From the IMG/VR virus record IMGVR_UViG_3300034104_003795, positions 1 through 64,000 of that record: a stretch of 64,000 nucleotides of DNA; one strand, 5' to 3'. Below are positions 1-11,976 of this stretch, in pieces (the stretch's first letter is position 1; the number at the start of each line of letters is the position of its first letter). The notes under the pieces were generated by a model, which saw only the letters and a program-made list of their open reading frames with translations, was not told the origin of the DNA and made no database searches. A program made the translations under genes and the position numbers.

Positions 1-1615
1 TTCTTACAAAATCATAATAAGCAAAATTAGCTACTTCTCTAAATTCAGGTCTTGCCAATGTTTTACTTAATGAGAATCTATACTTTACTTTATCTAAATT
101 ATAAGAAAGGTTTAATGATGGTAAAATATCTAAATACTCTCTATTCACATTTACTTTACTTCCACTAAAATCTGCGGTATTAACATTGAATAGATTATAC
201 TCACCTCTTAAACCTGTATTTAGTTTCCACTTTCCCCATTCGTTTTCATACATTGAGTAAAGAGAACCTAAATCAAAATCGGCAGTGTATCTATCCGTAT
301 TATTTGTTATTTCATCCAACATATCAGTTGAAAGATATCTGAATATCCTTGCATTAAAGCCTCTAATCTTTTTTAGGTAACCACCACCTATTTTAATTTT
401 ACCAAAATCTTTGTTGATATTACCATTAAAACTATTCTCATCCATTACACTCCAAAAACGATATGTATCTCTCCATGCAGTAGCATAAGGTTCGTTTACA
501 CCTAATGATTTTGTAATTGGATTAACTCTATAATCTGGTTGTTCTCTGAATATAAAATTATATCCTAAATTGAAATCTAATGTTTTAATCTTCCCATCAA
601 ATTGAGAATTGATAACAACATTATTAATATGGTTAGATGAATTACTTAAAACATTTTGAACATTATCAAAGTTATCGCCATTACGAGTTAAATATGTATC
701 ATCCGCCTGATAGTTTACTAATGTTTTCCAGCTATATCGGTTTTTACCTAAATAAGTTAAGTTTAATAAACTATTTGCGGAAAATCTTTTCGTAAACAAA
801 GTATCTCTATAATCATATGCCAATTCAGTTGATGATTGATAATCAGTTCTTTCAATATAATTTAATCCAAATGTATTTCTAATTGTTGAACTAAACAATG
901 CATTAAATTTGTTTTTCTTTAAACCAAATGATAATCCACCATTTAAGTTTGGTGATGATGTAAACCCTTCTACAATTGGATTACCAAATTGTTTTGTGAA
1001 TAATCTTTTATCACCATTACTACTAATACGATATTTGTAAGTGGATGGGAATGTGGAAGGGAATTCGGTAGCTTGAACTAACTTAAAATCTTTAAGAGAT
1101 GAAACCAAACCCCAACCACTTCCCAATGAGATATTGAAAAAGTTATCGGATACTTCTTTTGTTGTAATTTGTACCAATCCACCACTCCAATCGCCCGGTT
1201 GGTTTGCGGATGCTGATTTGGCAACTATAATATTATCAATTAATGATGTTGGAATTATATCAAATGAAAATGCTCTCCTATCAGGTTCGGTTGATGGTAG
1301 GAGTGTTTTGTTTAGGATAGCTGAATTATATCTATCTGCCAATCCTCTTACCAATACAAACTTATCGTTTTGAATTGTTACACCACTTACTCTTTTAAGT
1401 GCATCACCAACATTTCTATCAGGTGTTTTTTTAATAAAATCTATTGATACTCCATCCGATACTACGGATGAATTACGAATGGTTGTTATTACAGCTACTT
1501 CTGTAGATTTCTTACCCGCTGAACGGACTGTAATTGTGGATAGTTGTTTGGAAAATAATGTGTCTTGTGAATACGTTAGAAATGGAAGTAACATTAATAA
1601 AAGAAACGCTCTCAT
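1..1615 (-). CDS. TonB-dependent outer-membrane receptor, Bacteroidota type; runs off the left window edge; absent from ORF track
   Basis: Hand translation from ATG at 1615: MRAFLLLMLLPFLTYSQ signal peptide, then plug-domain motifs DGVSIDFIKKTPDRNVGDALKRVSGVTIQNDKFVLVRGLADRYN and FSFDIIPTSLIDNIIVAKSASANQPGDWSGGLVQITT. Confidence 0.85.
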   Translation of the reverse strand, partial: MRAFLLLMLLPFLTYSQDTLFSKQLSTITVRSAGKKSTEVAVITTIRNSSVVSDGVSIDFIKKTPDRNVGDALKRVSGVTIQNDKFVLVRGLADRYNSAILNKTLLPSTEPDRRAFSFDIIPTSLIDNIIVAKSASANQPGDWSGGLVQITTKEVSDNFFNISLGSGWGLVSSLKDFKLVQATEFPSTFPSTYKYRISSNGDKRLFTKQFGNPIVEGFTSSPNLNGGLSFGLKKNKFNALFSSTIRNTFGLNYIERTDYQSSTELAYDYRDTLFTKRFSANSLLNLTYLGKNRYSWKTLVNYQADDTYLTRNGDNFDNVQNVLSNSSNHINNVVINSQFDGKIKTLDFNLGYNFIFREQPDYRVNPITKSLGVNEPYATAWRDTYRFWSVMDENSFNGNINKDFGKIKIGGGYLKKIRGFNARIFRYLSTDMLDEITNNTDRYTADFDLGSLYSMYENEWGKWKLNTGLRGEYNLFNVNTADFSGSKVNVNREYLDILPSLNLSYNLDKVKYRFSLSKTLARPEFREVANFAYYDFVR

Positions 1616-3007: not shown

Positions 3008-3736
3008 TTATTTAGTGAATACACCTTTTTTAATCATTTTATCTAATATATTTGCACAAGCTATATCTAATGCTTTTTTAGTTGAAATACTAATAGTTGA
3101 TTGGTTAAACTTAATCGGGTCTATTGAAGCATCTGAAACTAATGTTAATTGTCTATTTGTTTTAGCCTCACCCAAACCAGATGCTGCGATGATTGAACCA
3201 TTTTCAGCATTTGTGAAACGAACCTGTAAACCTAAACGAGTTACCAAATTATCTTTGATACCATCTTTTAAATTTATTGTTTCATCTTCGGATACTGAAT
3301 AATCATATACTTCAATTTCAACAAAGTAATGTGCTAATTTAATCTTTCCTCTACCTTCAATTTTGTTTTCAGAAATACCAGCATTTGATGCTTTGAATTG
3401 AGCAACCATTCTGTTCTTAATTTCTGTTTTATCTTCGGTGAATTCAAATCTATTAAGGTTATCCAAATATTCCAATACGATATTTGCAACACCCAATCCA
3501 ACTCTCTTTTCTTTTAATTCAGGATACATTTCGTACACTTCTTCACCAATACCACATTTAAGGATTTGAATATACTTCTTTGGACCTTCGTAATCTAAAT
3601 ATGCAGATATATCTTTCTTTTTTTCAAAATCTGCTTTGAATTCTTCTGTTTTAGTACTTCCTATTGTTTGAGCATGTAGGACACCCACACCACTCGTAAT
3701 TAACAATATACCTAATAATACGATTAATTTTTTCAT
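3008..3736 (-). CDS. CsgG/HfaB-like exported protein
   Basis: Signal peptide ..VLHA-Q; GLGVANIVLEYLDNLNRFEFTE, AHYFVEIEV and LGLQVRFTNAENGSIIAASGLGEA follow the CsgG-family pattern. Confidence 0.65.
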   Translation of the reverse strand: MKKLIVLLGILLITSGVGVLHAQTIGSTKTEEFKADFEKKKDISAYLDYEGPKKYIQILKCGIGEEVYEMYPELKEKRVGLGVANIVLEYLDNLNRFEFTEDKTEIKNRMVAQFKASNAGISENKIEGRGKIKLAHYFVEIEVYDYSVSEDETINLKDGIKDNLVTRLGLQVRFTNAENGSIIAASGLGEAKTNRQLTLVSDASIDPIKFNQSTISISTKKALDIACANILDKMIKKGVFTK

Positions 3737-3792: not shown

Positions 3793-4269
3793 TTACTTTA
3801 CATTTGGGTCTTCTAGATTTTTGATATATTCATCAATCAATCTACTTACTGCTTCAGGCTTTTCATCAGCCTTAAACTTAACCTTTATTTTAGCCATCCC
3901 TGCTTCACTTGGATTATATCCTGAATCAACTTCAATACCTTTGATATTGTGTTCGTATCCTTTTTTCTTAAATAAACCTAATAAAGATTTTTTAAGACTG
4001 GATACTTCCTTTTCTTCATCACCAAATATAAGTCTACAAGTAAACTCAATATCTAGCTCATCTAATCCAATAGATGAATGGTCCGCTAAAATATAAAGAG
4101 GTACAACCAAATCCTTACCACCTATATTAAAGGAAGTAGTTTTGGGTGTACCATCTTCATTGAAATAGTTTCGGAGAGCATTAATATGCTGTCTTTCACT
4201 TATACCTTGAGAAACCATAGCGGCCTCTAATAGACCGCCAACTAGTTCCTCTACATTTAATCTTGCCAT
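3793..4269 (-). CDS. DUF2589-like protein (partner of the adjacent DUF2589)
   Basis: LVGGLLEAAMVSQ..VPLYILADHSSIGLDELDIEF resembles DUF2589 pair members. Confidence 0.55.
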   Translation of the reverse strand: MARLNVEELVGGLLEAAMVSQGISERQHINALRNYFNEDGTPKTTSFNIGGKDLVVPLYILADHSSIGLDELDIEFTCRLIFGDEEKEVSSLKKSLLGLFKKKGYEHNIKGIEVDSGYNPSEAGMAKIKVKFKADEKPEAVSRLIDEYIKNLEDPNVK

Positions 4270-4293: not shown

Positions 4294-4890
4294 TTACTTT
4301 GCTTCTTCAGTAAGTGGAATTAAAGATGGTTCTAACATTTGAGTTAGGTAATCTGATAATTTCAACATACCTTCAGTTGCTGGTAATTGTTCAGCATGTA
4401 CTTTTACATTGTATTTAGCTGAGTTGTCAGTACTTCTAGTGTTCTCTTTGTTTGTAGCTACTTTACCAGAAATTTTTGCATTCCAGCTCATACCCCAAAA
4501 TCTACCACCAGCTGATACTTCAACACTGCTTTCAGTTTTTACATCACTTTTTTCTGTCTCTGAAGTTTTTACTTCCATAGCAAATTCAATATCTGCTGAA
4601 GTGATTGCTAATGAAGGAAGTGGTACTAATGGTAACATAGGAACTTTACTATACAATTTTTGTATAGTTTGTTGACCTGTTGCACCATCGGTTACAACTC
4701 TGTTCATTTCAACATCTAAAGAACGTGCTTTAGTTTTTTTAGTTTTCTCGTCCGTTACGAATGCTACTTCAGAAATGTATTTCCAAGTTACTTCGTTTAA
4801 TTTTGCTTGACCTTTTGCCATACCAACAATCGGTGAAACAATCAAATCTTCAATAGGAAGACCTGCGAATTGGTCTGCGATACCTGCCAT
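4294..4890 (-). CDS. DUF2589 family protein
   Basis: QFAGLPIEDLIVSPIVGMAKGQAKL..VPMLPLVPLPSLAITSADIEFAMEV..DNSAKYNVKVHAEQ. Confidence 0.7.
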   Translation of the reverse strand: MAGIADQFAGLPIEDLIVSPIVGMAKGQAKLNEVTWKYISEVAFVTDEKTKKTKARSLDVEMNRVVTDGATGQQTIQKLYSKVPMLPLVPLPSLAITSADIEFAMEVKTSETEKSDVKTESSVEVSAGGRFWGMSWNAKISGKVATNKENTRSTDNSAKYNVKVHAEQLPATEGMLKLSDYLTQMLEPSLIPLTEEAK

Positions 4891-5257: not shown

Positions 5258-5536
5258 TTATCCTAATTCTTCTTCAGTCCCAGCATCCAATTTGTTCTTA
5301 TCGTGTTCCGCTTTTCTATTGATGTACTTATCAACCGAAGCGATACCAAATGCGCCCAATGTGATTACTAAGAATCCGTTGAAAATATATTCGTTGATTA
5401 GTAATTCCTTACCCATATAACCTGTTATCAAGTCTACGAATAATGCAAGTACCATACAACCAAATGATAAGAAACCAACTACTGATTTTTCGTTGATATC
5501 ATTGTTGTCTTTGAATAATTCTTTAAAGAATCCCAT
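5258..5536 (-). CDS. two-TM small membrane protein (holin-like topology)
   Basis: Two hydrophobic segments and a charged C-tail. Confidence 0.5.
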   Translation of the reverse strand: MGFFKELFKDNNDINEKSVVGFLSFGCMVLALFVDLITGYMGKELLINEYIFNGFLVITLGAFGIASVDKYINRKAEHDKNKLDAGTEEELG

Positions 5537-5579: not shown

Positions 5580-6239
5580 TTATCCAGCTTGTTCAGCATC
5601 TTCATCTTTAATCTTTCCACACTTCAAACATTCTTCATCGCCATCTCCGTCTAAGTCACCCCAAACGTGCTCACATTGTCTATGTGCAAAATATACATCA
5701 ATCTTACCATCACCATCAAAATCAATACCATCCATTACACCATCACCATCTTCATCTACCTCAATACCGGTTCTTGGTTGAGCTTTAAAAGGGCTTTCAA
5801 TAATGTGAGGATTATTTGGTTCTGATTTTACTTCCACTTTATTTGCTTCGATAAGGTTAATTTCATGTGCGTTTTTTGCAGCTTGTACAAATGCATCTGG
5901 AATCAATGGAGTGTTATTTGGTGGAGTTACAGGCATATCAGCAGTATTGCTTAATGATGTACCATCTTCCTCATCCATCTTTTGTACTAACATCTTATCC
6001 TTATCGGTATCACTAAACCAATAATCTATAATCTTACCATAAGAACCGATGAAAGCTCCTAATAACAATAATAGAAGTTCTTTCCATTCTCCTTCTATTG
6101 CAGATTTGTTAAATATAGCAAAGAACATTCCTGCCATAATAAACATAAATCCACCCAACACCATAGCAGTAATCCACCATCTACGGCTCATCATTTTATT
6201 TAATAGGTCTTTAAACCCACTTGGTTGTTGCTCTGCCAT
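5580..6239 (-). CDS. two-TM membrane protein with C-terminal DxDGDG Ca-binding repeats and Cys/His ligands
   Basis: DEDGDGVMDGIDFDGDGKID, CEHVWGDLDGDGDEECLKC. Confidence 0.6.
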   Translation of the reverse strand: MAEQQPSGFKDLLNKMMSRRWWITAMVLGGFMFIMAGMFFAIFNKSAIEGEWKELLLLLLGAFIGSYGKIIDYWFSDTDKDKMLVQKMDEEDGTSLSNTADMPVTPPNNTPLIPDAFVQAAKNAHEINLIEANKVEVKSEPNNPHIIESPFKAQPRTGIEVDEDGDGVMDGIDFDGDGKIDVYFAHRQCEHVWGDLDGDGDEECLKCGKIKDEDAEQAG

Positions 6240-6262: not shown

Positions 6263-6583
6263 TTACCATTCAGCTGGTTTCTCTTTGAATTCATCACCTT
6301 CTTTCTTCTTCTCCTTTGGAGCTGGTGCTGGTTGTGCCGTTCCACCATTTCCACCTTTGTTGATGATTACAGTTTTACCTGCTGCTTGAGATTGTTGGTT
6401 AGAGTTTGTAATGTTAATTACTGGAGCAGCTGCCGGTGCCGGAGTTGCTTCTTTATCATCACCGCCTGTTAATTTTGTTGTGAACCAACCACCCACACCT
6501 AATGTGATAGTTGATACAAGTCCTAATAGTATGTTCTTTATTGAACCACCACCACTTGATTGTTCTTGTTGTTCTTCTGCCAT
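6263..6583 (-). CDS. single-TM protein with low-complexity Pro/Ala/Gln tail
   Basis: ILLGLVSTITLGVGGWF; PAPAAAP. Confidence 0.55.
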   Translation of the reverse strand: MAEEQQEQSSGGGSIKNILLGLVSTITLGVGGWFTTKLTGGDDKEATPAPAAAPVINITNSNQQSQAAGKTVIINKGGNGGTAQPAPAPKEKKKEGDEFKEKPAEW

Positions 6584-6610: not shown

Positions 6611-6982
6611 TTATAACTTATTGAAATCAGTAATACCAATCATCTTACCATTTGCATCATATAGAGCTATTCTATAAGCTGATGCCGGTAAAGCGGTAGT
6701 ATATACTTTTAATATATTATCTCCAGAATTTGCGTACATTGTTTCTTTAGATACTACTCTATTTGCAATATCTAAAATTTTAACTGTCACATTTCCTGCA
6801 GTTTCTAGCTTTACGTTCATAGCCACTTCCGAAGTGACAAATTGAGATTGTAACTTAATACCAGCGGTTGCTGACATTTTTAATTCTGCGTTTGGATTTA
6901 CAGGTTGAATCATATCAATTGGAGATTTTCTACATCCAACCAAGATGATTACTCCAAATAACACTAATAATACTTTTTTCAT
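6611..6982 (-). CDS. lipoprotein with T9SS-CTD/FlgD-like Ig domain
   Basis: Lipobox ILVGC; GNVTVKILDIANRVV..GDNILKVYTTALPASAYRIALYD. Confidence 0.6.
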   Translation of the reverse strand: MKKVLLVLFGVIILVGCRKSPIDMIQPVNPNAELKMSATAGIKLQSQFVTSEVAMNVKLETAGNVTVKILDIANRVVSKETMYANSGDNILKVYTTALPASAYRIALYDANGKMIGITDFNKL

Positions 6983-6994
6983 TTTAATTCTATT

Positions 6995-7348
6995 TTAATT
7001 TATTATCAGTAACGTTTTACCTATTTGGACACTATTCTCATCTTCCAAAGATAAATATAAATATCTAACAGGTAACGATTTTGTGTATAACTTTAAGGAA
7101 TTTTCCCCAATTTTACCAATTATTCTTTCTCTAGTAACTACTTGCTGACCTACTGAATCAAAAAGAGTAAGTGTATATATTCCTTCCGATTTTAAAGTGA
7201 ACTTAAATTGTTCTCCGTTTCCAATAGATGCTTCTTTAACAGAAAATATATCTTCTACTTTTGGTGGTGGGGTTGGTTCTACTTCTACTTTTCTACAAGA
7301 GATTATAAAAACAACACAACACAATAAGATTAATATTAACTTTTTCAT
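6995..7348 (-). CDS. lipoprotein with T9SS-CTD/FlgD-like Ig domain (paralogue of neighbour)
   Basis: Lipobox IISC; YTLTLFDSVGQQV..GENSLKLYTKSLPVRYLYLSLED. Confidence 0.6.
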   Translation of the reverse strand: MKKLILILLCCVVFIISCRKVEVEPTPPPKVEDIFSVKEASIGNGEQFKFTLKSEGIYTLTLFDSVGQQVVTRERIIGKIGENSLKLYTKSLPVRYLYLSLEDENSVQIGKTLLIIN

Positions 7349-9636
7349 TATTTCATTTTTACTTTTAATGTGTTTCCGCTTTTATTTACTGCATCGGTGA
7401 ATGAAATTGAAATTAAACCTAATACATTGTTCAATTTTGTTTGTGGTTTGAAACTGATTTTATATTCGGTAGTATTATCTAAAACCCCACCATCAGTAAT
7501 TAAAGAACCAAAATTTACATAATCACCTTTATCAGTTCCATAATTAGTTGGTGACCCCTTTGTCTTATAAGATACACTACTAAATTTCAATAAACTATTA
7601 TCGTAATTTAATTTGAATTGAGTTCCAACTAATTCTTGTTGTAATGGGTCAATCTTAATATATGCAGTAACACTATCTCCAATAATTTCAGTTATTATAG
7701 ATGCGTTTATTTGATTTGATATTGGTAAACTCATTGGTATAACACTCATACTTCTAATAGAAGAACCTGATATCGCAGGTGGAGTTTGTTGTGCTGAATG
7801 TGATAAATTTACATCACCTTTCCAAGTTACACTAACATTATATGTGTTATTAAGTGTTCCACTATTCAAATTAAATGGATATAAACTTCTAGTGTAATTG
7901 AATTGTGTATTCCAATTTGATTTTGTAATCGCATCATATTCCGATTTTCCATACAACTTCATCAAATAAGTTAATGTTGAATATTCATTAATAGGTTGTA
8001 CACCTATTAAATGTTGTAATAATTTATAGGTATCGGTTTCATTAAATACACCATTACCATCTACATCTGCGTTCATAAATTGAATACCAGATGTAAACTC
8101 TAATCCACTTTCGTTTCCAAATATTCCACTATTTGATAATTCTTTAAATGCCAAATACACATCGGATACACTTACTACACTACTATATAAATTATTTAGT
8201 TCGGTTTGATTAGTATATGATAAATCAATTCCATGTTGCTTAAACATCACATTAGGTGTAAATGTAAACTCTGCACTCAACCCCCAAAAAAATCCAGCTC
8301 TTCTTATATTAGATGAAAATGATGAACCTGCAAAATTAAGTTCCGTTGGTGTATAAATCCAATATGCGGCCCAAGTTCCATCATCCCATTGATAAGTTAC
8401 AGCCCCATTCCACAAATCAAATAATTGTAAACTTGTAACACTACTTGCTGAAGTACCTTGTGGGAATTCTCTTTTATCAATTAGGATTTGATATCTTTGG
8501 GATTGTGATTCATAATCATATACTACGCACCATTCTACTTGTCCGCCTGATGTTGTTGCTCTAACACCATTACCATTTACCTTTACAGTATCTAAATCAT
8601 TTGTTAAATCAACTTTACCTAATCCACTTATAGCTCTTGATGTGTTAGTTGTTGTTCCCCACACATTGTTTACAAAAGTATTTGCTTTTGCTGTAAATTT
8701 AGTTTCATCTACATTACTTCCAAAATCAAAATTAAATCTTGCTGTTAATACTTCCCCATTTGAATGTGTTACTGAATTTGTATAGAATTCTGTAAATGTT
8801 GCATCATCAGGGTTAGTCCAAGTTCCGTATTCAATTACATAAGGGCAACTAAATCCATTCGGTAAATCATTCCATTGAGAACCGTTCCATTTTGTTACCG
8901 CATAATCTTCGTTACCACTATTGTTTGGTTCACCAGGTGCCCAGTTATTATATTGACCTTGTATGTTTCCGGCTGTTTGTCCGTTTGATGTTTTTATTAG
9001 AGTTCCAGCTTCAGGACCGGCATCAATTCTCCATTGTCCCTCAACAGCTTCATCCGTTAATGCAAACCAAATGTTTGTTTGTGGAACATTGTTAAACACA
9101 AACGCATCTTCATCTGCGGAAGTGATTGTTACCAAATATCCTTGTTGCCCTTTAAATGTGGTATTTAACGCTGCCGCCCTTGCACCCGTATAACTTGTTC
9201 CTGTTGATATTGGTCTATAAAAATGACCATTTGTTCCATTGTAAAAGAACCCCGTTGGATTAACCGTAGCTGCTACCGATAATGCAATATTACCTCTTAC
9301 TGAACCTGTGTTTACTTTTAAAGATGCTAATGCCGTATTGATATTAGCCATTGTTCCCGTTACCACTAAACGAGTCTTATTACCTGCTAATGTAAATCCA
9401 CTAGCTGCAGTTAGACCTGTTGTTGTGGTTAAGTTAAATGTAGTACCTGTTGGTGGATTAACTAAACTGATTGAAGCTAATAGAGTTGCGGTTGAACCAA
9501 ATCCACTCAATACAAACCCACTCGCATCTTGTCCGTTTGTGGATGGTAAAAAAGATTTAGAGTCCGGTGCAGATACACTCTGACCGAACCCTAAATTTGT
9601 AATTAATAAAAATAAAAATATTAATAAGTTTCTCAT
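7348..9636 (-). CDS. exported multidomain protein: C-type lectin, dockerin-like repeat, C-terminal cohesin-like domain
   Basis: Signal peptide; GYLVTITSADEDAF..WFALTD..YNNWAPGEPNNSGNEDYAVTKWNGSQWNDLP (CTL); ADVDGNGVFNETDTYKLLQHLIG; WKGDVNLSH; LVGTQFKLNYDNSLLKF. Confidence 0.7.
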   Translation of the reverse strand: MRNLLIFLFLLITNLGFGQSVSAPDSKSFLPSTNGQDASGFVLSGFGSTATLLASISLVNPPTGTTFNLTTTTGLTAASGFTLAGNKTRLVVTGTMANINTALASLKVNTGSVRGNIALSVAATVNPTGFFYNGTNGHFYRPISTGTSYTGARAAALNTTFKGQQGYLVTITSADEDAFVFNNVPQTNIWFALTDEAVEGQWRIDAGPEAGTLIKTSNGQTAGNIQGQYNNWAPGEPNNSGNEDYAVTKWNGSQWNDLPNGFSCPYVIEYGTWTNPDDATFTEFYTNSVTHSNGEVLTARFNFDFGSNVDETKFTAKANTFVNNVWGTTTNTSRAISGLGKVDLTNDLDTVKVNGNGVRATTSGGQVEWCVVYDYESQSQRYQILIDKREFPQGTSASSVTSLQLFDLWNGAVTYQWDDGTWAAYWIYTPTELNFAGSSFSSNIRRAGFFWGLSAEFTFTPNVMFKQHGIDLSYTNQTELNNLYSSVVSVSDVYLAFKELSNSGIFGNESGLEFTSGIQFMNADVDGNGVFNETDTYKLLQHLIGVQPINEYSTLTYLMKLYGKSEYDAITKSNWNTQFNYTRSLYPFNLNSGTLNNTYNVSVTWKGDVNLSHSAQQTPPAISGSSIRSMSVIPMSLPISNQINASIITEIIGDSVTAYIKIDPLQQELVGTQFKLNYDNSLLKFSSVSYKTKGSPTNYGTDKGDYVNFGSLITDGGVLDNTTEYKISFKPQTKLNNVLGLISISFTDAVNKSGNTLKVKMK

Positions 9637-11318
9637 TAGTCTACTACAAGTTCTATCTTCTTACCAGTCGCATCAACAGCATCTGCTAGTACAAAGAAGA
9701 ATAAACCGGCAGTATTGCTTAATGGAACTTTTGGTGTGAAGATTAATTTATATGGAATACCAGTTTTGATTCTAGAAACTTTTATTTGGTCAATAGAACC
9801 AAATGTCAATCTACCATTATCATGCGTTGAGAAATTGGTGATTGTAGAACCAGCATCAAATATTACATTATCTAATGTTAATTTTGTTGAATCATAATTC
9901 ATAATAACCTGTAAACCCGCTAAACCTTCTTTGGTTAATCTAGTACTTAAAACAACTTTACCACCTTCTAATGTAGATACTACACTTAAAGATGCTTGTT
10001 CTAATTTAGCACTTTCATATGAATTTGATTGATATGAAGTCATTGCCATTGTTGACATACTCTTTATAGTAGCAACATCCGATGTACCAGGATTAGCTGC
10101 ATTTGTAAAGATACCACTTGCTATTCTTGCAGCTACAGTATCAGGATGAGATGAATGTGACCAATCCAAATCACCACCCCATGCAAATACAGCATCCACA
10201 GTTTGTGCAGGTTGTGTAACATATACTCTATATTTTGAAGTACCATCTAACCAACTCTGATTTAACAATCCACTATTCCATCTCCAAGAAGTTGCAGTTG
10301 ATGTTGGTATAAATGCGTTAGCCGATACGTCTTGTCCCATTACATAAGCAAATGCGTAATAAGAATCTGCTTCGGTGAAGGTCATATCATTTTTAGTAAT
10401 ATTACCAATTTTCTTTTCTAAATTTGGTCTTGTGAAATAATTTGCAACACCACTAATATCAGTTTGTGAAACACCTAAGAATGATTTGTATGCATCTGAT
10501 ACAGTTATAACATTGTTCATCCAAGTCTTTTGTGATGCAGGTGATACAAATACACCTAATGAATCACCAACTTTAATACCAGAAGTAAATAAGGCTTCAC
10601 CACTACCATCTAATGCTCTTTGTGCAATAGGTTGTTGTGACCAATCTATATCACCAGTACCATCGGTTTTTAATTTCATTAATTGAATGTTATGGTCAGC
10701 AATATTATATCCAGATGGAAATAATACTCTTACTTTAAAGAAAGAAGTATTACCAGTCACTCCGGTAATTGATAAAGGACCGGATGTTGTTTTTACATAT
10801 GGAATATTTGCACCAGTAGCACTATCTAAAGCATATGATAAATCCAATTTATGAAAGTTTTGATAAGTGTTTTGGTCTTTAATGATATACTTTTGTGTTG
10901 CTATCACACCATTTACCGATTGGTCTGCTCTTTGAACTGCTAATTGTCCAACATTCCAATCTGCATTTACAGCATATCCCCAAGGTGTAGTGGTATATTG
11001 ACCATATAAAGATGTATCACTCACATTTGCATTTGAGGTGAACTTATAGTTAGTCCAACCGGTATAATAAGTTTGTGATTGACTACCTTGTGAGAAAGCA
11101 GTAGATACATAAGTTAAAGCCTTATTATTAAATTGATATCTTAACCAAAAATAACGTGGTTTAGTTACACCTTTATCTACACTATATGTTACGGTTACAG
11201 TATCACCAACTTTATAAGGTCCTGCTGAAATAGATTGGTTTACAACTATTTGCGCTTCTGTCTTAAATGTTAATAGGGATATCACCAATACCCCTAAAAA
11301 TGTTAATAGTTTTTTCAT
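9636..11318 (-). CDS. exported protein with degenerate dockerin-like and C-terminal cohesin-like domains
   Basis: Signal peptide ..TEA-Q; ITVSDAYKSFL; WGGDLDWSHS; GLAGLQVIMNYDSTKLTLDNV. Confidence 0.6.
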   Translation of the reverse strand: MKKLLTFLGVLVISLLTFKTEAQIVVNQSISAGPYKVGDTVTVTYSVDKGVTKPRYFWLRYQFNNKALTYVSTAFSQGSQSQTYYTGWTNYKFTSNANVSDTSLYGQYTTTPWGYAVNADWNVGQLAVQRADQSVNGVIATQKYIIKDQNTYQNFHKLDLSYALDSATGANIPYVKTTSGPLSITGVTGNTSFFKVRVLFPSGYNIADHNIQLMKLKTDGTGDIDWSQQPIAQRALDGSGEALFTSGIKVGDSLGVFVSPASQKTWMNNVITVSDAYKSFLGVSQTDISGVANYFTRPNLEKKIGNITKNDMTFTEADSYYAFAYVMGQDVSANAFIPTSTATSWRWNSGLLNQSWLDGTSKYRVYVTQPAQTVDAVFAWGGDLDWSHSSHPDTVAARIASGIFTNAANPGTSDVATIKSMSTMAMTSYQSNSYESAKLEQASLSVVSTLEGGKVVLSTRLTKEGLAGLQVIMNYDSTKLTLDNVIFDAGSTITNFSTHDNGRLTFGSIDQIKVSRIKTGIPYKLIFTPKVPLSNTAGLFFFVLADAVDATGKKIELVVD

Positions 11319-11319
11319 C

Positions 11320-11976
11320 TTACTTTGCGTTTTTACCGAATAGTTTTTTAATCAAACTATCCGATGCTTTTTTAAGGGCGTTGCTTAAGGATGTTTGATT
11401 GAATTTACCACCCTGGTCAACGATTAACGTAGACATTGATATTTCAGATGAACTTTCTTCCACCACCACTTCTTTCTCTTTCTTTCCATCTTTATAAAGA
11501 ATACCCTGTAGTCTTACAACCACTTCTTCTTCTCCTTTATGAAAAACTGAAATATTTGTTTTTGTAGATAACACATCCAAATAAACAATATTTACTTTTA
11601 ATTTGTATGGTGCATCCGGAGCTAAATCATATCCTTTTTCCTGAAGATATTCTTCTAATATATTTTTTACCCCAAATGCCAAATTACGATTTCCGGCTAA
11701 TTTACCAATCTTAACCTGGTTTTCAACACCTTCAACCCAAACGTGGTCTGATTCTTCATACCAAATATTTTCTGGATTATTTTTGAATGTACCGTCAATT
11801 CTATGAGTAATTTCATTAGAGAGTTCGGTAGCCCATTGTTCTCTACCACTAATTTGTAGAAATACAAAGAACAATTGGAATACGAGTGCAAATCCTATAA
11901 AAAGACCAACACCCAGTAAAAACATTTTGAACAATAACTCTTTAAAGTTCAAAACAGTTGATTTAATGTATTGCAT
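11320..11976 (-). CDS. membrane-anchored CsgG/TolB-N-like protein
   Basis: N-terminal TM; GNRNLAFGVKNILEEYLQEKGY and FNQTSLSNALKKA parallel the 3008 protein. Confidence 0.45.
   Translation of the reverse strand: MQYIKSTVLNFKELLFKMFLLGVGLFIGFALVFQLFFVFLQISGREQWATELSNEITHRIDGTFKNNPENIWYEESDHVWVEGVENQVKIGKLAGNRNLAFGVKNILEEYLQEKGYDLAPDAPYKLKVNIVYLDVLSTKTNISVFHKGEEEVVVRLQGILYKDGKKEKEVVVEESSSEISMSTLIVDQGGKFNQTSLSNALKKASDSLIKKLFGKNAK

What the first reader, a model, noticed from the sequence alone, without database searches (positions are those of the whole stretch)
6611..7348. Two lipoproteins that are little more than a lipid-anchored T9SS-CTD-like domain
Seen: after the lipobox Cys, both carry a ~70-aa pattern (V-x-I-L/F-D-x-x-G/N-x-x-V...G-x-N-x-L...L-P...Y-x-I/L) resembling the Bacteroidota type IX secretion C-terminal sorting domain. 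The two large cohesin/dockerin proteins next door resemble T9SS cargo but lack such a CTD. Inference: either a trans-acting sorting adaptor for those proteins, or CTD decoys that jam T9SS/gliding and hide T9SS-dependent phage receptors.
Basis: inference. Interest (0 to 1): 0.62.

Follow-up and report, generated by a model that had tools for sequence, protein, structure and literature searches.

The report
Phage lipoproteins built from T9SS sorting domain
A lake-water jumbo phage of Bacteroidota encodes two small lipoproteins whose only folded part descends from the bacterial type IX secretion sorting domain. At least one of them is predicted to act as a lipid anchor that grips the cohesin module of a large secreted phage protein encoded next door.

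Summary
Window 6611-6982(-) and 6995-7348(-) encode paralogous lipoproteins of 123 and 117 aa: a lipobox Cys, a linker of about 20 aa, and one 7-stranded beta-sandwich.

Three lines tie that sandwich to type-A T9SS C-terminal domains (CTDs):
- Fold: mirolase CTD Z 10.9 and PorU CTD Z 10.1 rank first of 48,161 chains.
- Profile comparison: hhalign 94%, E 1e-7.
- Reverse search: the family profile picks genuine cargo C-termini in Bacteroidota genomes, down to E 6e-10.

They are not family members. Scores fall below the curated cut-offs, the PNP strand is absent, and there is no passenger protein.

The family was seen only in viral or metagenomic sequence. It occurs as a fixed pair in 76 of 79 related jumbo-phage loci. 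The pair sits in a conserved envelope module that includes two secreted proteins ending in cohesin modules and a CsgG-like protein.

Co-folding places P0002 on the cohesin of the upstream protein P0003 (ipSAE 0.72; best control 0.00). The two also co-vary (r 0.77).

Best reading: lipid-anchored docks for the cohesin proteins, an exapted CTD fold. T9SS use and the "decoy" idea are untested.

The parts
6611..6982 (-). P0001, a 123-aa lipoprotein. Signal peptide at nt 6935-6982, lipobox Cys17 at 6932-6934, linker at 6863-6931, CTD-like 7-strand beta-sandwich (residues 41-123) at 6614-6862. The C-terminus GITDFNKL is invariant in orthologues.
6995..7348 (-). P0002, a 117-aa paralogous lipoprotein. 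Cys18 at nt 7295-7297; sandwich at about nt 6998-7237. The C-terminus GKTLLIIN resembles genuine CTD ends. Its start codon overlaps the P0003 stop codon by 1 nt. Predicted to bind the P0003 cohesin through residues 59-63, 69-76 and 85-93.
7348..9636 (-). P0003, a 762-aa secreted protein with an SPI signal and Gln after the predicted cleavage site. C-type lectin domain at nt 8836-9150, dockerin-like Ca-loop segment at nt 8008-8136 (weak match), C-terminal cohesin (residues 635-762) at nt 7351-7734.
9636..11318 (-). P0004, a 560-aa secreted protein. The N-terminal 430 aa have no family match. The C-terminal cohesin (residues 433-560, nt 9639-10022) is homologous to that of P0003. Its stop codon overlaps the P0003 start codon by 1 nt.
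11320..11976 (-). A 218-aa membrane-anchored protein. It gives a sub-threshold Lipoprotein_16/YajG match and a weak TraT match. It is the first gene of the conserved block.
6263..6583 (-). A 106-aa low-complexity protein with one weak hydrophobic segment. Conserved directly downstream of P0001 in 76 of 79 loci.
5580..6239 (-). A 219-aa membrane protein. Its C-terminal part carries repeated D-x-D-G-D-G calcium-loop-like motifs and a C-x-x-C pair. Conserved in 70 of 79 loci.
5258..5536 (-). A 92-aa protein with two hydrophobic segments. Found in 44 of 79 loci.
3008..3736 (-). A 242-aa secreted CsgG-like protein, the most conserved gene of the module. It has an SPI signal, Gln after the predicted cleavage site, and no lipobox.
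2..1615 (-). A TonB-dependent-receptor-like outer-membrane protein (Plug + OMP_b-brl_3), cut by the start of the record. Detected near the module in 12 of 79 loci and in L005.

Best explanation
P0001 and P0002 are phage-made lipoproteins, exported and lipidated by the host Sec/SPII pathway during infection of a Bacteroidota host. Each consists of a lipid anchor, a flexible linker and one beta-sandwich that descends from the type-A T9SS C-terminal sorting domain. In these proteins the fold has been exapted as a protein-docking module.

P0002 grips the C-terminal cohesin module of the lectin-bearing secreted protein P0003. That gene lies immediately upstream and is translationally coupled to it. 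P0001 most likely does the same for the second cohesin protein, P0004.

The result is a lipid-tethered lectin/cohesin complex at the host outer membrane. It forms part of a conserved phage envelope-remodelling module that also holds a CsgG-like protein and several small membrane proteins.

Shown by computation: the lipoprotein signals, the fold, the remote homology to the CTD, the restriction to viral sequence, the synteny, and the cohesin identity.

Supported by model and co-variation only: P0002 binding P0003.

Inferred: the P0001-P0004 pairing, outer-membrane localisation, and the biological purpose. I favour surface or envelope remodelling, such as receptor masking or superinfection exclusion.
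For: Lipoprotein signal: lipobox with an invariant Cys.

Fold: the AF2 model has pLDDT 90.4 and seven strands. T9SS CTDs rank first: 8qb1 Z 10.9 at rmsd 1.8 A, 6za2 Z 10.1, 8glk Z 9.8. Atlas neighbours are viral ~123-aa clusters, then Por_Secre_tail cargo of Bacteroidota.

Homology: hhalign 94%, E 1.2e-7, with negative controls. A reverse profile search hits the C-termini of 360-1330-aa ORFs that carry the PNP motif.

Binding: ipSAE 0.72 against 0.00 for the best control. Partner pLDDT is at least 79 and the three runs share at least 66% of contacts. That mark was reached by 58 of 80 solved complexes and 2 of 110 mismatched pairs; the counts hold only roughly, because my own alignments were used. 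The interface lies on cohesin residues 646-650, 677-682, 736-745 and 760-762. It includes L739, G740, L741 and S743, which are invariant.

Interface conservation: the P0002 interface is more conserved than the rest of its sandwich, 0.726 against 0.618. Only 323 of 10,000 random residue subsets reach that value.

Co-variation: P0002 against the P0003 cohesin gives r 0.77. Against the P0003 N-terminal part it gives 0.26, and other adjacent pairs give 0.22-0.36.

Stoichiometry and coupling: two cohesin ORFs plus two lipoproteins in 64 loci, and one plus one in the distant locus L084. Start and stop codons overlap in 34 of 64 loci. The two cohesins are paralogues (hhalign 98.7%).
Against: - No experiment exists. 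The co-fold is a model, run with my own alignments. Gene adjacency could inflate the co-variation.
- The P0003 side of the interface is not more conserved than the rest of its cohesin.
- P0001 shows no specific co-variation partner: r 0.38 with the P0004 cohesin, 0.39 with the P0003 cohesin, 0.57 with P0002.
- In 28 of 64 loci an extra gene of about 294 aa separates P0003 from P0002.
- P0003 and P0004 have only SPI signals. Where the complex sits, periplasmic face or surface, is unknown.
- Known cohesin partners are dockerins, not beta-sandwiches.
Confidence: 0.5

Rival explanations
1. Split secretion signal. The lipoprotein supplies a CTD in trans. The cohesin-tagged cargo rides with it through the host SprA/PorV translocon and ends up lipid-anchored on the cell surface.
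For: - Genuine CTD ancestry and fold.
- Predicted binding to a Sec-exported neighbour that has no CTD.
- The P0002-type C-terminus [G/K]-K-T-x-I-I-I-[N/K] resembles genuine CTD ends and keeps a Lys or Arg in the last strand. That feature is functionally important in CTDs (PMC10994853, PMC11285876).
- CTD recognition is by shape and hydrophobic surface rather than by motif (PMC10994853).
- MAGs of plausible host lineages carry 18-63 CTD proteins each.
- An unverified Atlas lead points to P0004-like viral proteins that carry Por_Secre_tail in cis.
Against: - Scores fall far below genuine cargo: 15 and 9 bits against 27-69 bits.
- The PNP strand is not aligned.
- About 40% of a CTD's surface is buried in the translocon (PMC10994853), which leaves little room for a bound cohesin.
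- An N-terminal lipid tether has no precedent among T9SS substrates that I know of.
- P0001-type orthologues carry an LES, a T9SS-independent route.
- The module has its own CsgG-like protein.
- No conventional CTD protein was found in this phage or in three complete relatives.
Confidence: 0.15
2. CTD decoy. The lipid-anchored CTD mimics occupy PorV or SprA and block host type IX secretion and gliding, hiding T9SS-dependent phage receptors.
For: - CTD-like shape.
- PorV binds many different CTDs. The small CTD protein PorA binds PorV at the surface without using the translocon (PMC7712824).
- 37 of 76 P0001-type orthologues have a canonical surface-export signal.
Against: - There is no direct evidence.
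- The most conserved face of the sandwich is the one predicted to bind the phage's own cohesin.
- The fixed pairing with cohesin proteins is not explained by a decoy role.
- The window's own P0001 lacks the LES.
Confidence: 0.07
3. Stand-alone superinfection-exclusion lipoproteins of the Llp/Cor/TraT type. They bind and inactivate a host outer-membrane receptor, and the cohesin contact is incidental.
For: - Small phage lipoproteins commonly do this, for example T5 Llp (PMC9586334).
- The module holds TraT/CsgG-fold proteins.
- The block lies among early-type nucleotide-metabolism genes rather than structural genes.
Against: - There is no sequence or fold relation to Llp or Cor beyond the signal peptide.
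- This reading does not explain the conserved 1:1 association and co-variation with cohesin modules.
Confidence: 0.12
4. Outer-membrane spanin components of a lysis cassette.
For: - They are small lipoproteins next to small membrane proteins.
- There are very weak PHROG spanin hits, E 0.2-0.3, confined to the signal peptide.
Against: - No endolysin or holin family was detected nearby.
- A folded 85-aa beta-sandwich is unlike the short proline-rich o-spanins (established knowledge).
- The genes are duplicated and paired with 560-760-aa secreted proteins.
Confidence: 0.03

Closest known systems
Type-A T9SS C-terminal sorting domain (Pfam PF18962 / TIGR04183; structures 8QB1, 6ZA2, 8GLK)
   Same: Same 7-stranded 3+4 beta-sandwich of about 80 aa, with the best structural matches and the lowest rmsd (1.8-2.3 A). 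Remote but reciprocal sequence homology. Shared core motifs: x-I-x-D-x-x-G/N-x-x-V, G-x-N, and L-x-x-G/S-x-Y. The domain sits at the C-terminal end of a Sec-exported protein of a Bacteroidota system.
   Different: Scores below the curated cut-offs. No PNP first-strand motif. No passenger protein. The N-terminus is lipidated. Encoded by a phage. Predicted partner is a cohesin rather than PorV/SprA.
DUF3244 (PF11589; BT_1867 4G5A, BVU_0276 3D33, BT_3571 3SD2)
   Same: Small stand-alone Bacteroidota proteins of about 100-130 aa made of a signal peptide plus one such sandwich. Of 48 family members, 12 hit this model at E<=1e-3. Structural Z 8.3-8.9.
   Different: P0001 scores 22.9 bits, below the cut-off of 25; P0002 gives no hit. 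CTDs are structurally closer. The function of DUF3244 is unknown. Some members come from Bacteroides species that, to my knowledge, lack a T9SS.
Minimal CTD proteins of bacteria: Fjoh_0547 (112 aa) and PorA (246 aa) (PMC7712824)
   Same: Proteins that are little or nothing more than a signal peptide and a CTD. Both reach the outside without the SprA/Sov channel, and PorA binds PorV.
   Different: These carry genuine CTDs and SPI signals, are not lipoproteins, are chromosomal, and are not paired with cohesin proteins.
Cohesin-dockerin anchoring (cellulosomal scaffoldins, PF00963/PF00404)
   Same: A cohesin module serves as a plug-in site that ties a secreted protein to a cell-envelope anchor. 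The phage cohesins match scaffoldin cohesins 3L8Q and 4UMS.
   Different: The predicted partner is a beta-sandwich lipoprotein, not a calcium-binding dockerin. Here the cohesin sits on the cargo and the anchor is a lipid.
Phage superinfection-exclusion lipoproteins (T5 Llp, Cor; PMC9586334)
   Same: Small phage-encoded outer-membrane lipoproteins made during infection.
   Different: There is no homology, the fold differs, and no receptor target is known here.

Membership tests
T9SS type-A CTD (PF18962 / TIGR04183) | Score at or above the curated cut-off of the family models | tested here: not met
   P0001 scores 15.3 bits against a cut-off of 27 (PF18962) and 17.9 against 23 (TIGR04183). P0002 gives no hit. 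Of 48 family members, 6 reach E<=1e-3, best 1.6e-5. Genuine cargo in candidate host-lineage MAGs scores 27-69 bits.
T9SS type-A CTD (PF18962 / TIGR04183) | Seven-stranded 3+4 Ig-like beta-sandwich (PMC10994853, PMC11285876) | tested here: met
   The model has pLDDT 90.4 and 7 strands. 8qb1 gives Z 10.9 at rmsd 1.8 A over 77 aa, 6za2 Z 10.1 and 8glk Z 9.8, ranked first of 48,161 chains. Complement MG domains tie within 1 Z unit. Atlas neighbours are Por_Secre_tail cargo.
T9SS type-A CTD (PF18962 / TIGR04183) | Lies at the C-terminal end of a Sec-exported passenger protein | tested here: not met
   The domain is C-terminal, but it is preceded only by a lipobox and a linker of about 20 aa. There is no passenger.
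T9SS type-A CTD (PF18962 / TIGR04183) | Conserved fold-specifying motifs, including the PNP first strand | tested here: not met
   hhalign aligns only the central strands: family columns 64-116 against CTD columns 25-74 of 85. The PNP strand and the last strand are left out. Only N56 is conserved in that region.
T9SS type-A CTD (PF18962 / TIGR04183) | Near-invariant, functionally important Lys in the last strand (PMC10994853, PMC11285876) | tested here: inconclusive
   P0002-type ends in [G/K]-K/R-T-x-I-I-I-N/K, with Lys about 7 residues from the end. P0001-type ends in GITDFNK-L, with Lys 2 residues from the end. No residue-level structural superposition was available.
T9SS type-A CTD (PF18962 / TIGR04183) | T9SS-dependent export, PorV binding and CTD removal | not testable with these tools
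   This needs genetics and fractionation in a host. SprA is too large to co-fold here.
DUF3244 (PF11589) | Score at or above the gathering cut-off | tested here: not met
   P0001 scores 22.9 bits against 25; P0002 gives nothing. Of 48 members, 12 reach E<=1e-3. Fold Z is 8.3-8.9.
Bacterial SPII lipoprotein | N-terminal basic residues plus a hydrophobic signal ending in a lipobox with an invariant Cys | tested here: met
   The lipoboxes are LVGC and IISC. The Cys is invariant in 48 of 48 members and in the orthologues across the 76 paired loci. Lipidation itself was not tested.
Bacteroidota surface lipoprotein (LES, C-X-K-(D/E)2-X; PMC5080379) | Lys followed by two acidic residues directly after the +1 Cys | tested here: not met
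   The window's P0001 reads CRKSPID and P0002 reads CRKVEVE; neither fits. Among orthologues, 37 of 76 P0001-type and 0 of 76 P0002-type proteins have C-x-K-[DE][DE].
Dockerin (cohesin partner, PF00404) | Duplicated calcium-binding loop-helix segment | tested here: not met
   There is no dockerin match in P0001 or P0002, which are all-beta. Only P0003 has a weak dockerin-like stretch (E 0.03).
Cohesin (PF00963), for the neighbours' C-termini | Score at or above the gathering cut-off | tested here: met
   P0003:635-762 scores 27 bits against 24.1. Of 28 aligned C-terminal domains, 20 hit at E<=0.01, best 4.5e-8. The PDB profile search hits scaffoldin cohesins at 9e-5 and 6e-4.

The most novel reading that the evidence does not exclude
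The phage has split the type IX secretion signal from its cargo. A lipid-anchored CTD is supplied in trans and plugs into a cohesin tag on large lectin proteins. The complex passes the host T9SS translocon and stays lipid-tethered on the infected cell's surface. This would be a non-covalent 'piggyback' route through T9SS and a new, non-dockerin class of cohesin ligand.
Probability: 0.13. Interest if true: 0.85.

Novelty: new variant of a known kind. Interest (0 to 1): 0.62.

Why it matters
I found no report of T9SS sorting domains encoded by phages or joined to a lipoprotein signal. The papers held on huge-phage envelope proteins do not mention T9SS, lipoproteins or cohesins.

If the docking model is right, three things follow:
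- It shows how a secretion signal fold can be re-used as a membrane anchor.
- It adds a non-dockerin partner to cohesin biology.
- It defines a widespread envelope-remodelling module of abundant lake phages that infect Bacteroidota. The module has about 9 genes. The P0001 family numbers more than 3,600 sequence clusters, and the DNA was found in lake-water metagenomes of at least 19 studies.

It also gives T9SS researchers a natural set of CTD variants with which to test what the translocon recognises.

Tried and rejected
- Direct family scans (Pfam, NCBIfam, PHROGs) and a PDB sequence-profile search gave only sub-threshold or signal-peptide hits for the two lipoproteins.
- The megablast search of phage records found nothing.
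- A scan of 185,579 species genomes with P0001 peptide patterns found nothing.
- Global-mode hhalign gave uncalibrated, low probabilities and was discarded. Narrow subfamily profiles give weaker CTD signals than the diverse family profile: P0001-type 40.6%, P0002-type 6.4%.
- P0280, first taken for a family member, is a fragment of a genuine T9SS cargo. It was removed from later alignments. It was still among the 49 rows used for the P0001 model.
- I could not verify the Atlas lead that P0004-like viral proteins carry Por_Secre_tail in cis. The homologue list showed only close relatives. 80 more loci held no CTD. The distant L084 protein has no further relatives in IMG/VR. Three complete related genomes have no hit over the cut-off.
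- Co-variation gave no specific partner for P0001.
- The protein-atlas search for P0001 and for the CsgG-like protein failed because the machine was busy.
- The spanin reading was rejected. No lysis enzymes lie nearby and the fold is unlike o-spanins.
- Read laying was given 5,901 letters.
Full report
SETTING. The window is the first 64 kb of a 273,997-bp IMG/VR virus record. GC content is about 31% and almost all genes lie on the minus strand. No tRNA gene lies in the window. PHROG hits upstream of the region are thymidylate synthase, an endonuclease and a helicase. The finding therefore lies among early-type or accessory genes, not in the virion module. The DNA is near-identical to contigs from lake-water and freshwater metagenomes of at least 19 studies. 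A 522-bp contig 91% identical to the phage thyA is binned in a Crocinitomicaceae MAG, and a 70% match in an Algoriphagus MAG. This is a weak hint of host, or a case of mis-binning. The three SPI-type secreted proteins of the block (P0003, P0004 and the CsgG-like protein) all have Gln right after the predicted cleavage site. That is the Bacteroidetes 'Q-rule' (PMC5837995) and fits a Bacteroidota host.

THE OBSERVATION. P0001 (window 6611-6982, minus strand, 123 aa) and P0002 (6995-7348, minus strand, 117 aa) both start with MKK, a hydrophobic stretch and a lipobox (LVGC and IISC). They are 31% identical, E 6e-14. P0001 has 3,667 relatives at E<=0.01 among 90%-identity clusters, all about 123 aa long. 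P0002 has 97. A full scan of 1.8 billion representatives gives 62 clusters at 50% identity. In an alignment of 48 diverse members the Cys, G87 and N89 are invariant.

IS IT CTD-LIKE? Direct scans are sub-threshold. For P0001: DUF3244 22.9 bits (cut-off 25), Por_Secre_tail 15.3 (27), TIGR04183 17.9 (23). P0002 gives nothing. Five independent tests nevertheless agree.
- Family-wide scan: 6 of 48 members hit Por_Secre_tail and 12 of 48 hit DUF3244 at E<=1e-3.
- Profile against profile: I took 30 genuine CTDs from three Bacteroidota MAGs that hold 18-63 such proteins each. hhalign of the family against them gives 94.2%, E 1.2e-7, over the central strands. The reversed family gives 0.2% and the P0003 C-terminus 0.3%.
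- Reverse search: the family profile hits 69 of 401 Bacteroidota genomes. The ten best hits (E down to 6e-10) all end 1-14 residues before the stop codon of 360-1330-aa ORFs, and nearly all show the PNP motif. These are genuine cargo CTDs.
- Structure: the AF2 model (pLDDT 90.4) is a 7-strand sandwich covering residues 41-122.
- Structure search: in a search of 48,161 PDB representatives that does not rely on Foldseek, the mirolase CTD (Z 10.9, rmsd 1.8 A) and the PorU CTD (Z 10.1) rank first. The translocon-bound NucA CTD scores 9.8. Complement MG domains tie within one Z unit but at higher rmsd. DUF3244 structures score 8.3-8.9. In the ESM Atlas the nearest shapes are four all-viral clusters of 122-126 aa, followed only by Bacteroidota proteins in which 91-100% of members carry Por_Secre_tail.

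The domain is therefore a diverged homologue of the type-A CTD. It is not a family member. It fails the curated cut-offs, lacks the PNP strand, has no passenger, and carries a lipid at its N-terminus.

DISTRIBUTION. Only these two ORFs of the 274-kb genome match the family profile. No protein of this phage reaches the CTD cut-offs, and none does in three complete relatives. No lipoprotein orthologue of about 120 aa was found among the 401 bacterial genomes searched. Peptide patterns found none in 185,579 species genomes. Atlas clusters of the family are labelled 100% viral. In IMG/VR, 79 related loci were fetched, many on contigs of 230-330 kb. Of these, 76 carry exactly two tandem copies, always P0002-type followed by P0001-type. 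Two of the three exceptions are cut by contig ends. The third, L084, has a single copy.

THE MODULE. Across these loci the gene order is conserved:
- a Lipoprotein_16-like membrane protein;
- P0004;
- P0003;
- P0002;
- P0001;
- a 106-aa protein;
- a 219-aa membrane protein with D-x-D-G-D-G repeats;
- a 92-aa protein with two hydrophobic segments (in 44 of 79 loci);
- a 242-aa secreted protein.

The 242-aa protein is the most conserved gene of the block and folds like CsgG. Foldseek gives E 1.3e-7. VIA-align gives Z 11.3-12.0 for eight CsgG entries with 156-179 residues aligned. PelC, LptE and TraT score lower. A TonB-dependent-receptor-like gene follows in the closest relatives. In the window it is cut by the start of the record. 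Phage-borne outer-membrane barrels of this kind were recently catalogued (bioRxiv 10.64898/2026.10.24.761521), but that paper does not mention T9SS, lipoproteins or cohesins.

THE NEIGHBOURS. P0003 has a C-type lectin domain above the cut-off and a weak dockerin-like calcium loop. The C-terminal 125 aa of P0003 and P0004 are paralogous (hhalign 98.7%, E 2e-16). They are cohesins: 27 bits against a cut-off of 24.1 when scanned alone, 20 of 28 orthologous domains at E<=0.01, and scaffoldin cohesins in the PDB. The middle of P0003 varies between phages; one relative adds an LCCL domain. Neither protein has a CTD.

HOW IT LIKELY WORKS. The stop codon of P0004 overlaps the start codon of P0003, and the stop of P0003 overlaps the start of P0002, each by one base. 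The P0003-to-P0002 overlap is seen in 34 of 64 loci. I therefore co-folded mature P0003 with mature P0002, using alignments of orthologues. The score was 0.72, 0.73 and 0.72, against 0.00 for the best of three controls. Partner pLDDT was at least 79 and the runs agreed in at least 66% of contacts. That mark was reached by 58 of 80 solved complexes and 2 of 110 mismatched pairs; these counts hold only roughly, since my own alignments were used.

The contact joins P0002 strands 59-63, 69-76 and 85-93 to the cohesin (646-650, 677-682, 705, 736-745, 760-762). It includes the invariant L739-G740-L741-S743. On the P0002 side the interface is more conserved than the rest of the sandwich (323 of 10,000 random subsets reach it). 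On the cohesin side it is not.

Distance matrices over 42 distinct loci correlate at r 0.77 between P0002 and the P0003 cohesin. That is the highest value between any two proteins of the module. P0002 against the P0003 N-terminal part gives 0.26, and other adjacent pairs give 0.22-0.36. Lipoprotein number tracks cohesin number: two and two in most loci, one and one in L084.

I conclude that P0002 is most likely a lipid-anchored dock for the P0003 cohesin. By parallel, and because the family-wide conserved face is the same one, P0001 probably docks P0004.

TOPOLOGY. The Bacteroidota lipoprotein export signal is C-X-K-(D/E)2-X (PMC5080379). It is present in 37 of 76 P0001-type orthologues and in none of 76 P0002-type. 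The window's own P0001 (CRKSPID) lacks it. The two paralogues may therefore face different sides of the outer membrane in many phages. In this phage the sidedness is open. P0001-type proteins end in an invariant GITDFNK[L/I]. P0002-type proteins end in [G/K]KTxIII[N/K], which looks like genuine CTD ends. A Lys in the last strand is the one near-invariant, functionally important CTD residue, while the other motifs merely specify the fold and recognition is by shape (PMC10994853, PMC11285876). T9SS engagement therefore cannot be excluded. But about 40% of a CTD's surface is buried in the translocon (PMC10994853), which sits badly with a bound cohesin.

EXPRESSION. Three freshwater metatranscriptome assemblies hold short contigs over parts of the region. 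They include P0001 (6407-6769) and P0002 (7106-7299). Assembled contigs from RNA libraries show presence, not transcription.

COMPARISON AND NOVELTY. The nearest known things are:
- the type-A CTD (ancestry and fold);
- DUF3244 (the same stand-alone architecture, function unknown);
- the minimal CTD proteins Fjoh_0547 and PorA (PMC7712824);
- cohesin-dockerin anchoring (logic);
- phage exclusion lipoproteins such as T5 Llp (lifestyle).

None of these combines a lipobox, a CTD fold and a cohesin partner. I rate it a new variant of a known kind, interest 0.62. The decoy idea is neither supported nor excluded.

Noticed in passing
window 3008-3736 (-): The most conserved gene of the block encodes a secreted, non-lipidated CsgG-like protein (Z 11.3-12.0 to eight CsgG structures). 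It could be a phage-borne outer-membrane channel of the curli-secretion type, and a T9SS-independent way out for the cohesin proteins.
   Followed up: partly
window 2-1615 (-) and the far end of the record: A TonB-dependent-receptor-like gene (Plug + OMP_b-brl_3) is cut by the record start. Joining the record's end to its start keeps the frame open for 1,447 codons. Whether this is one gene, chance (1 in 3) or missing sequence is unresolved. No terminal repeat was found.
   Followed up: partly
window 4294-4890 and 3793-4269 (-): Two adjacent DUF2589 proteins (106 and 50 bits) lie between the module and the receptor-like gene. They are present only in the closest relatives (8-9 of 79 loci).
   Followed up: no
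window 5580-6239 (-): A membrane protein whose C-terminal part has tandem D-x-D-G-D-G calcium-loop-like motifs and a C-x-x-C pair. It could be a dockerin-like partner for one of the cohesins.
   Followed up: no
L005:4760-5644 and 27 further loci: In 28 of 64 loci an extra gene of about 294 aa, with no Pfam match, sits between the P0003-type gene and the P0002-type gene.
   Followed up: partly
proteins P0281, P0265, P0267: The CTD/DUF3244-like unit also occurs as tandem repeats. P0281 (428 aa) holds five copies, the last scoring 70 bits against Por_Secre_tail. P0265 (597 aa) has a sub-threshold CHAP match (24.4 bits, cut-off 26) ahead of the repeats. P0267 is a 2,473-aa protein.
   Followed up: no
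P0004 residues 24-432 (window 10023-11249): The Atlas feature search lists an all-viral cluster of 546-aa proteins in which 72% of members carry Por_Secre_tail (cosine 0.85, 196 shared features). Relatives of P0004 may carry a genuine CTD in cis where this phage has a cohesin.
   Followed up: partly
L088 and L091 (genome contigs): Short contigs 91% and 70% identical to the phage thyA are binned in a Crocinitomicaceae MAG and an Algoriphagus MAG. This is either a host hint or phage DNA mis-binned into MAGs.
   Followed up: no
L005:2157-4760: The P0003 orthologue of a related phage (867 aa) adds an LCCL domain to the C-type lectin. The middle of this protein varies in length (564-881 aa) while both ends are conserved, as expected of a ligand-binding part under diversification.
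   Followed up: no
L135 (G001:C14:34819-35022) and L132: Bacteroidota MAGs encode small ORFs (113 and about 135 aa) that are little more than a signal peptide and a CTD-like domain. L135 has a genuine CTD. L132 is an SPI protein with a CTD-like domain. Neither is a lipoprotein.
   Followed up: partly
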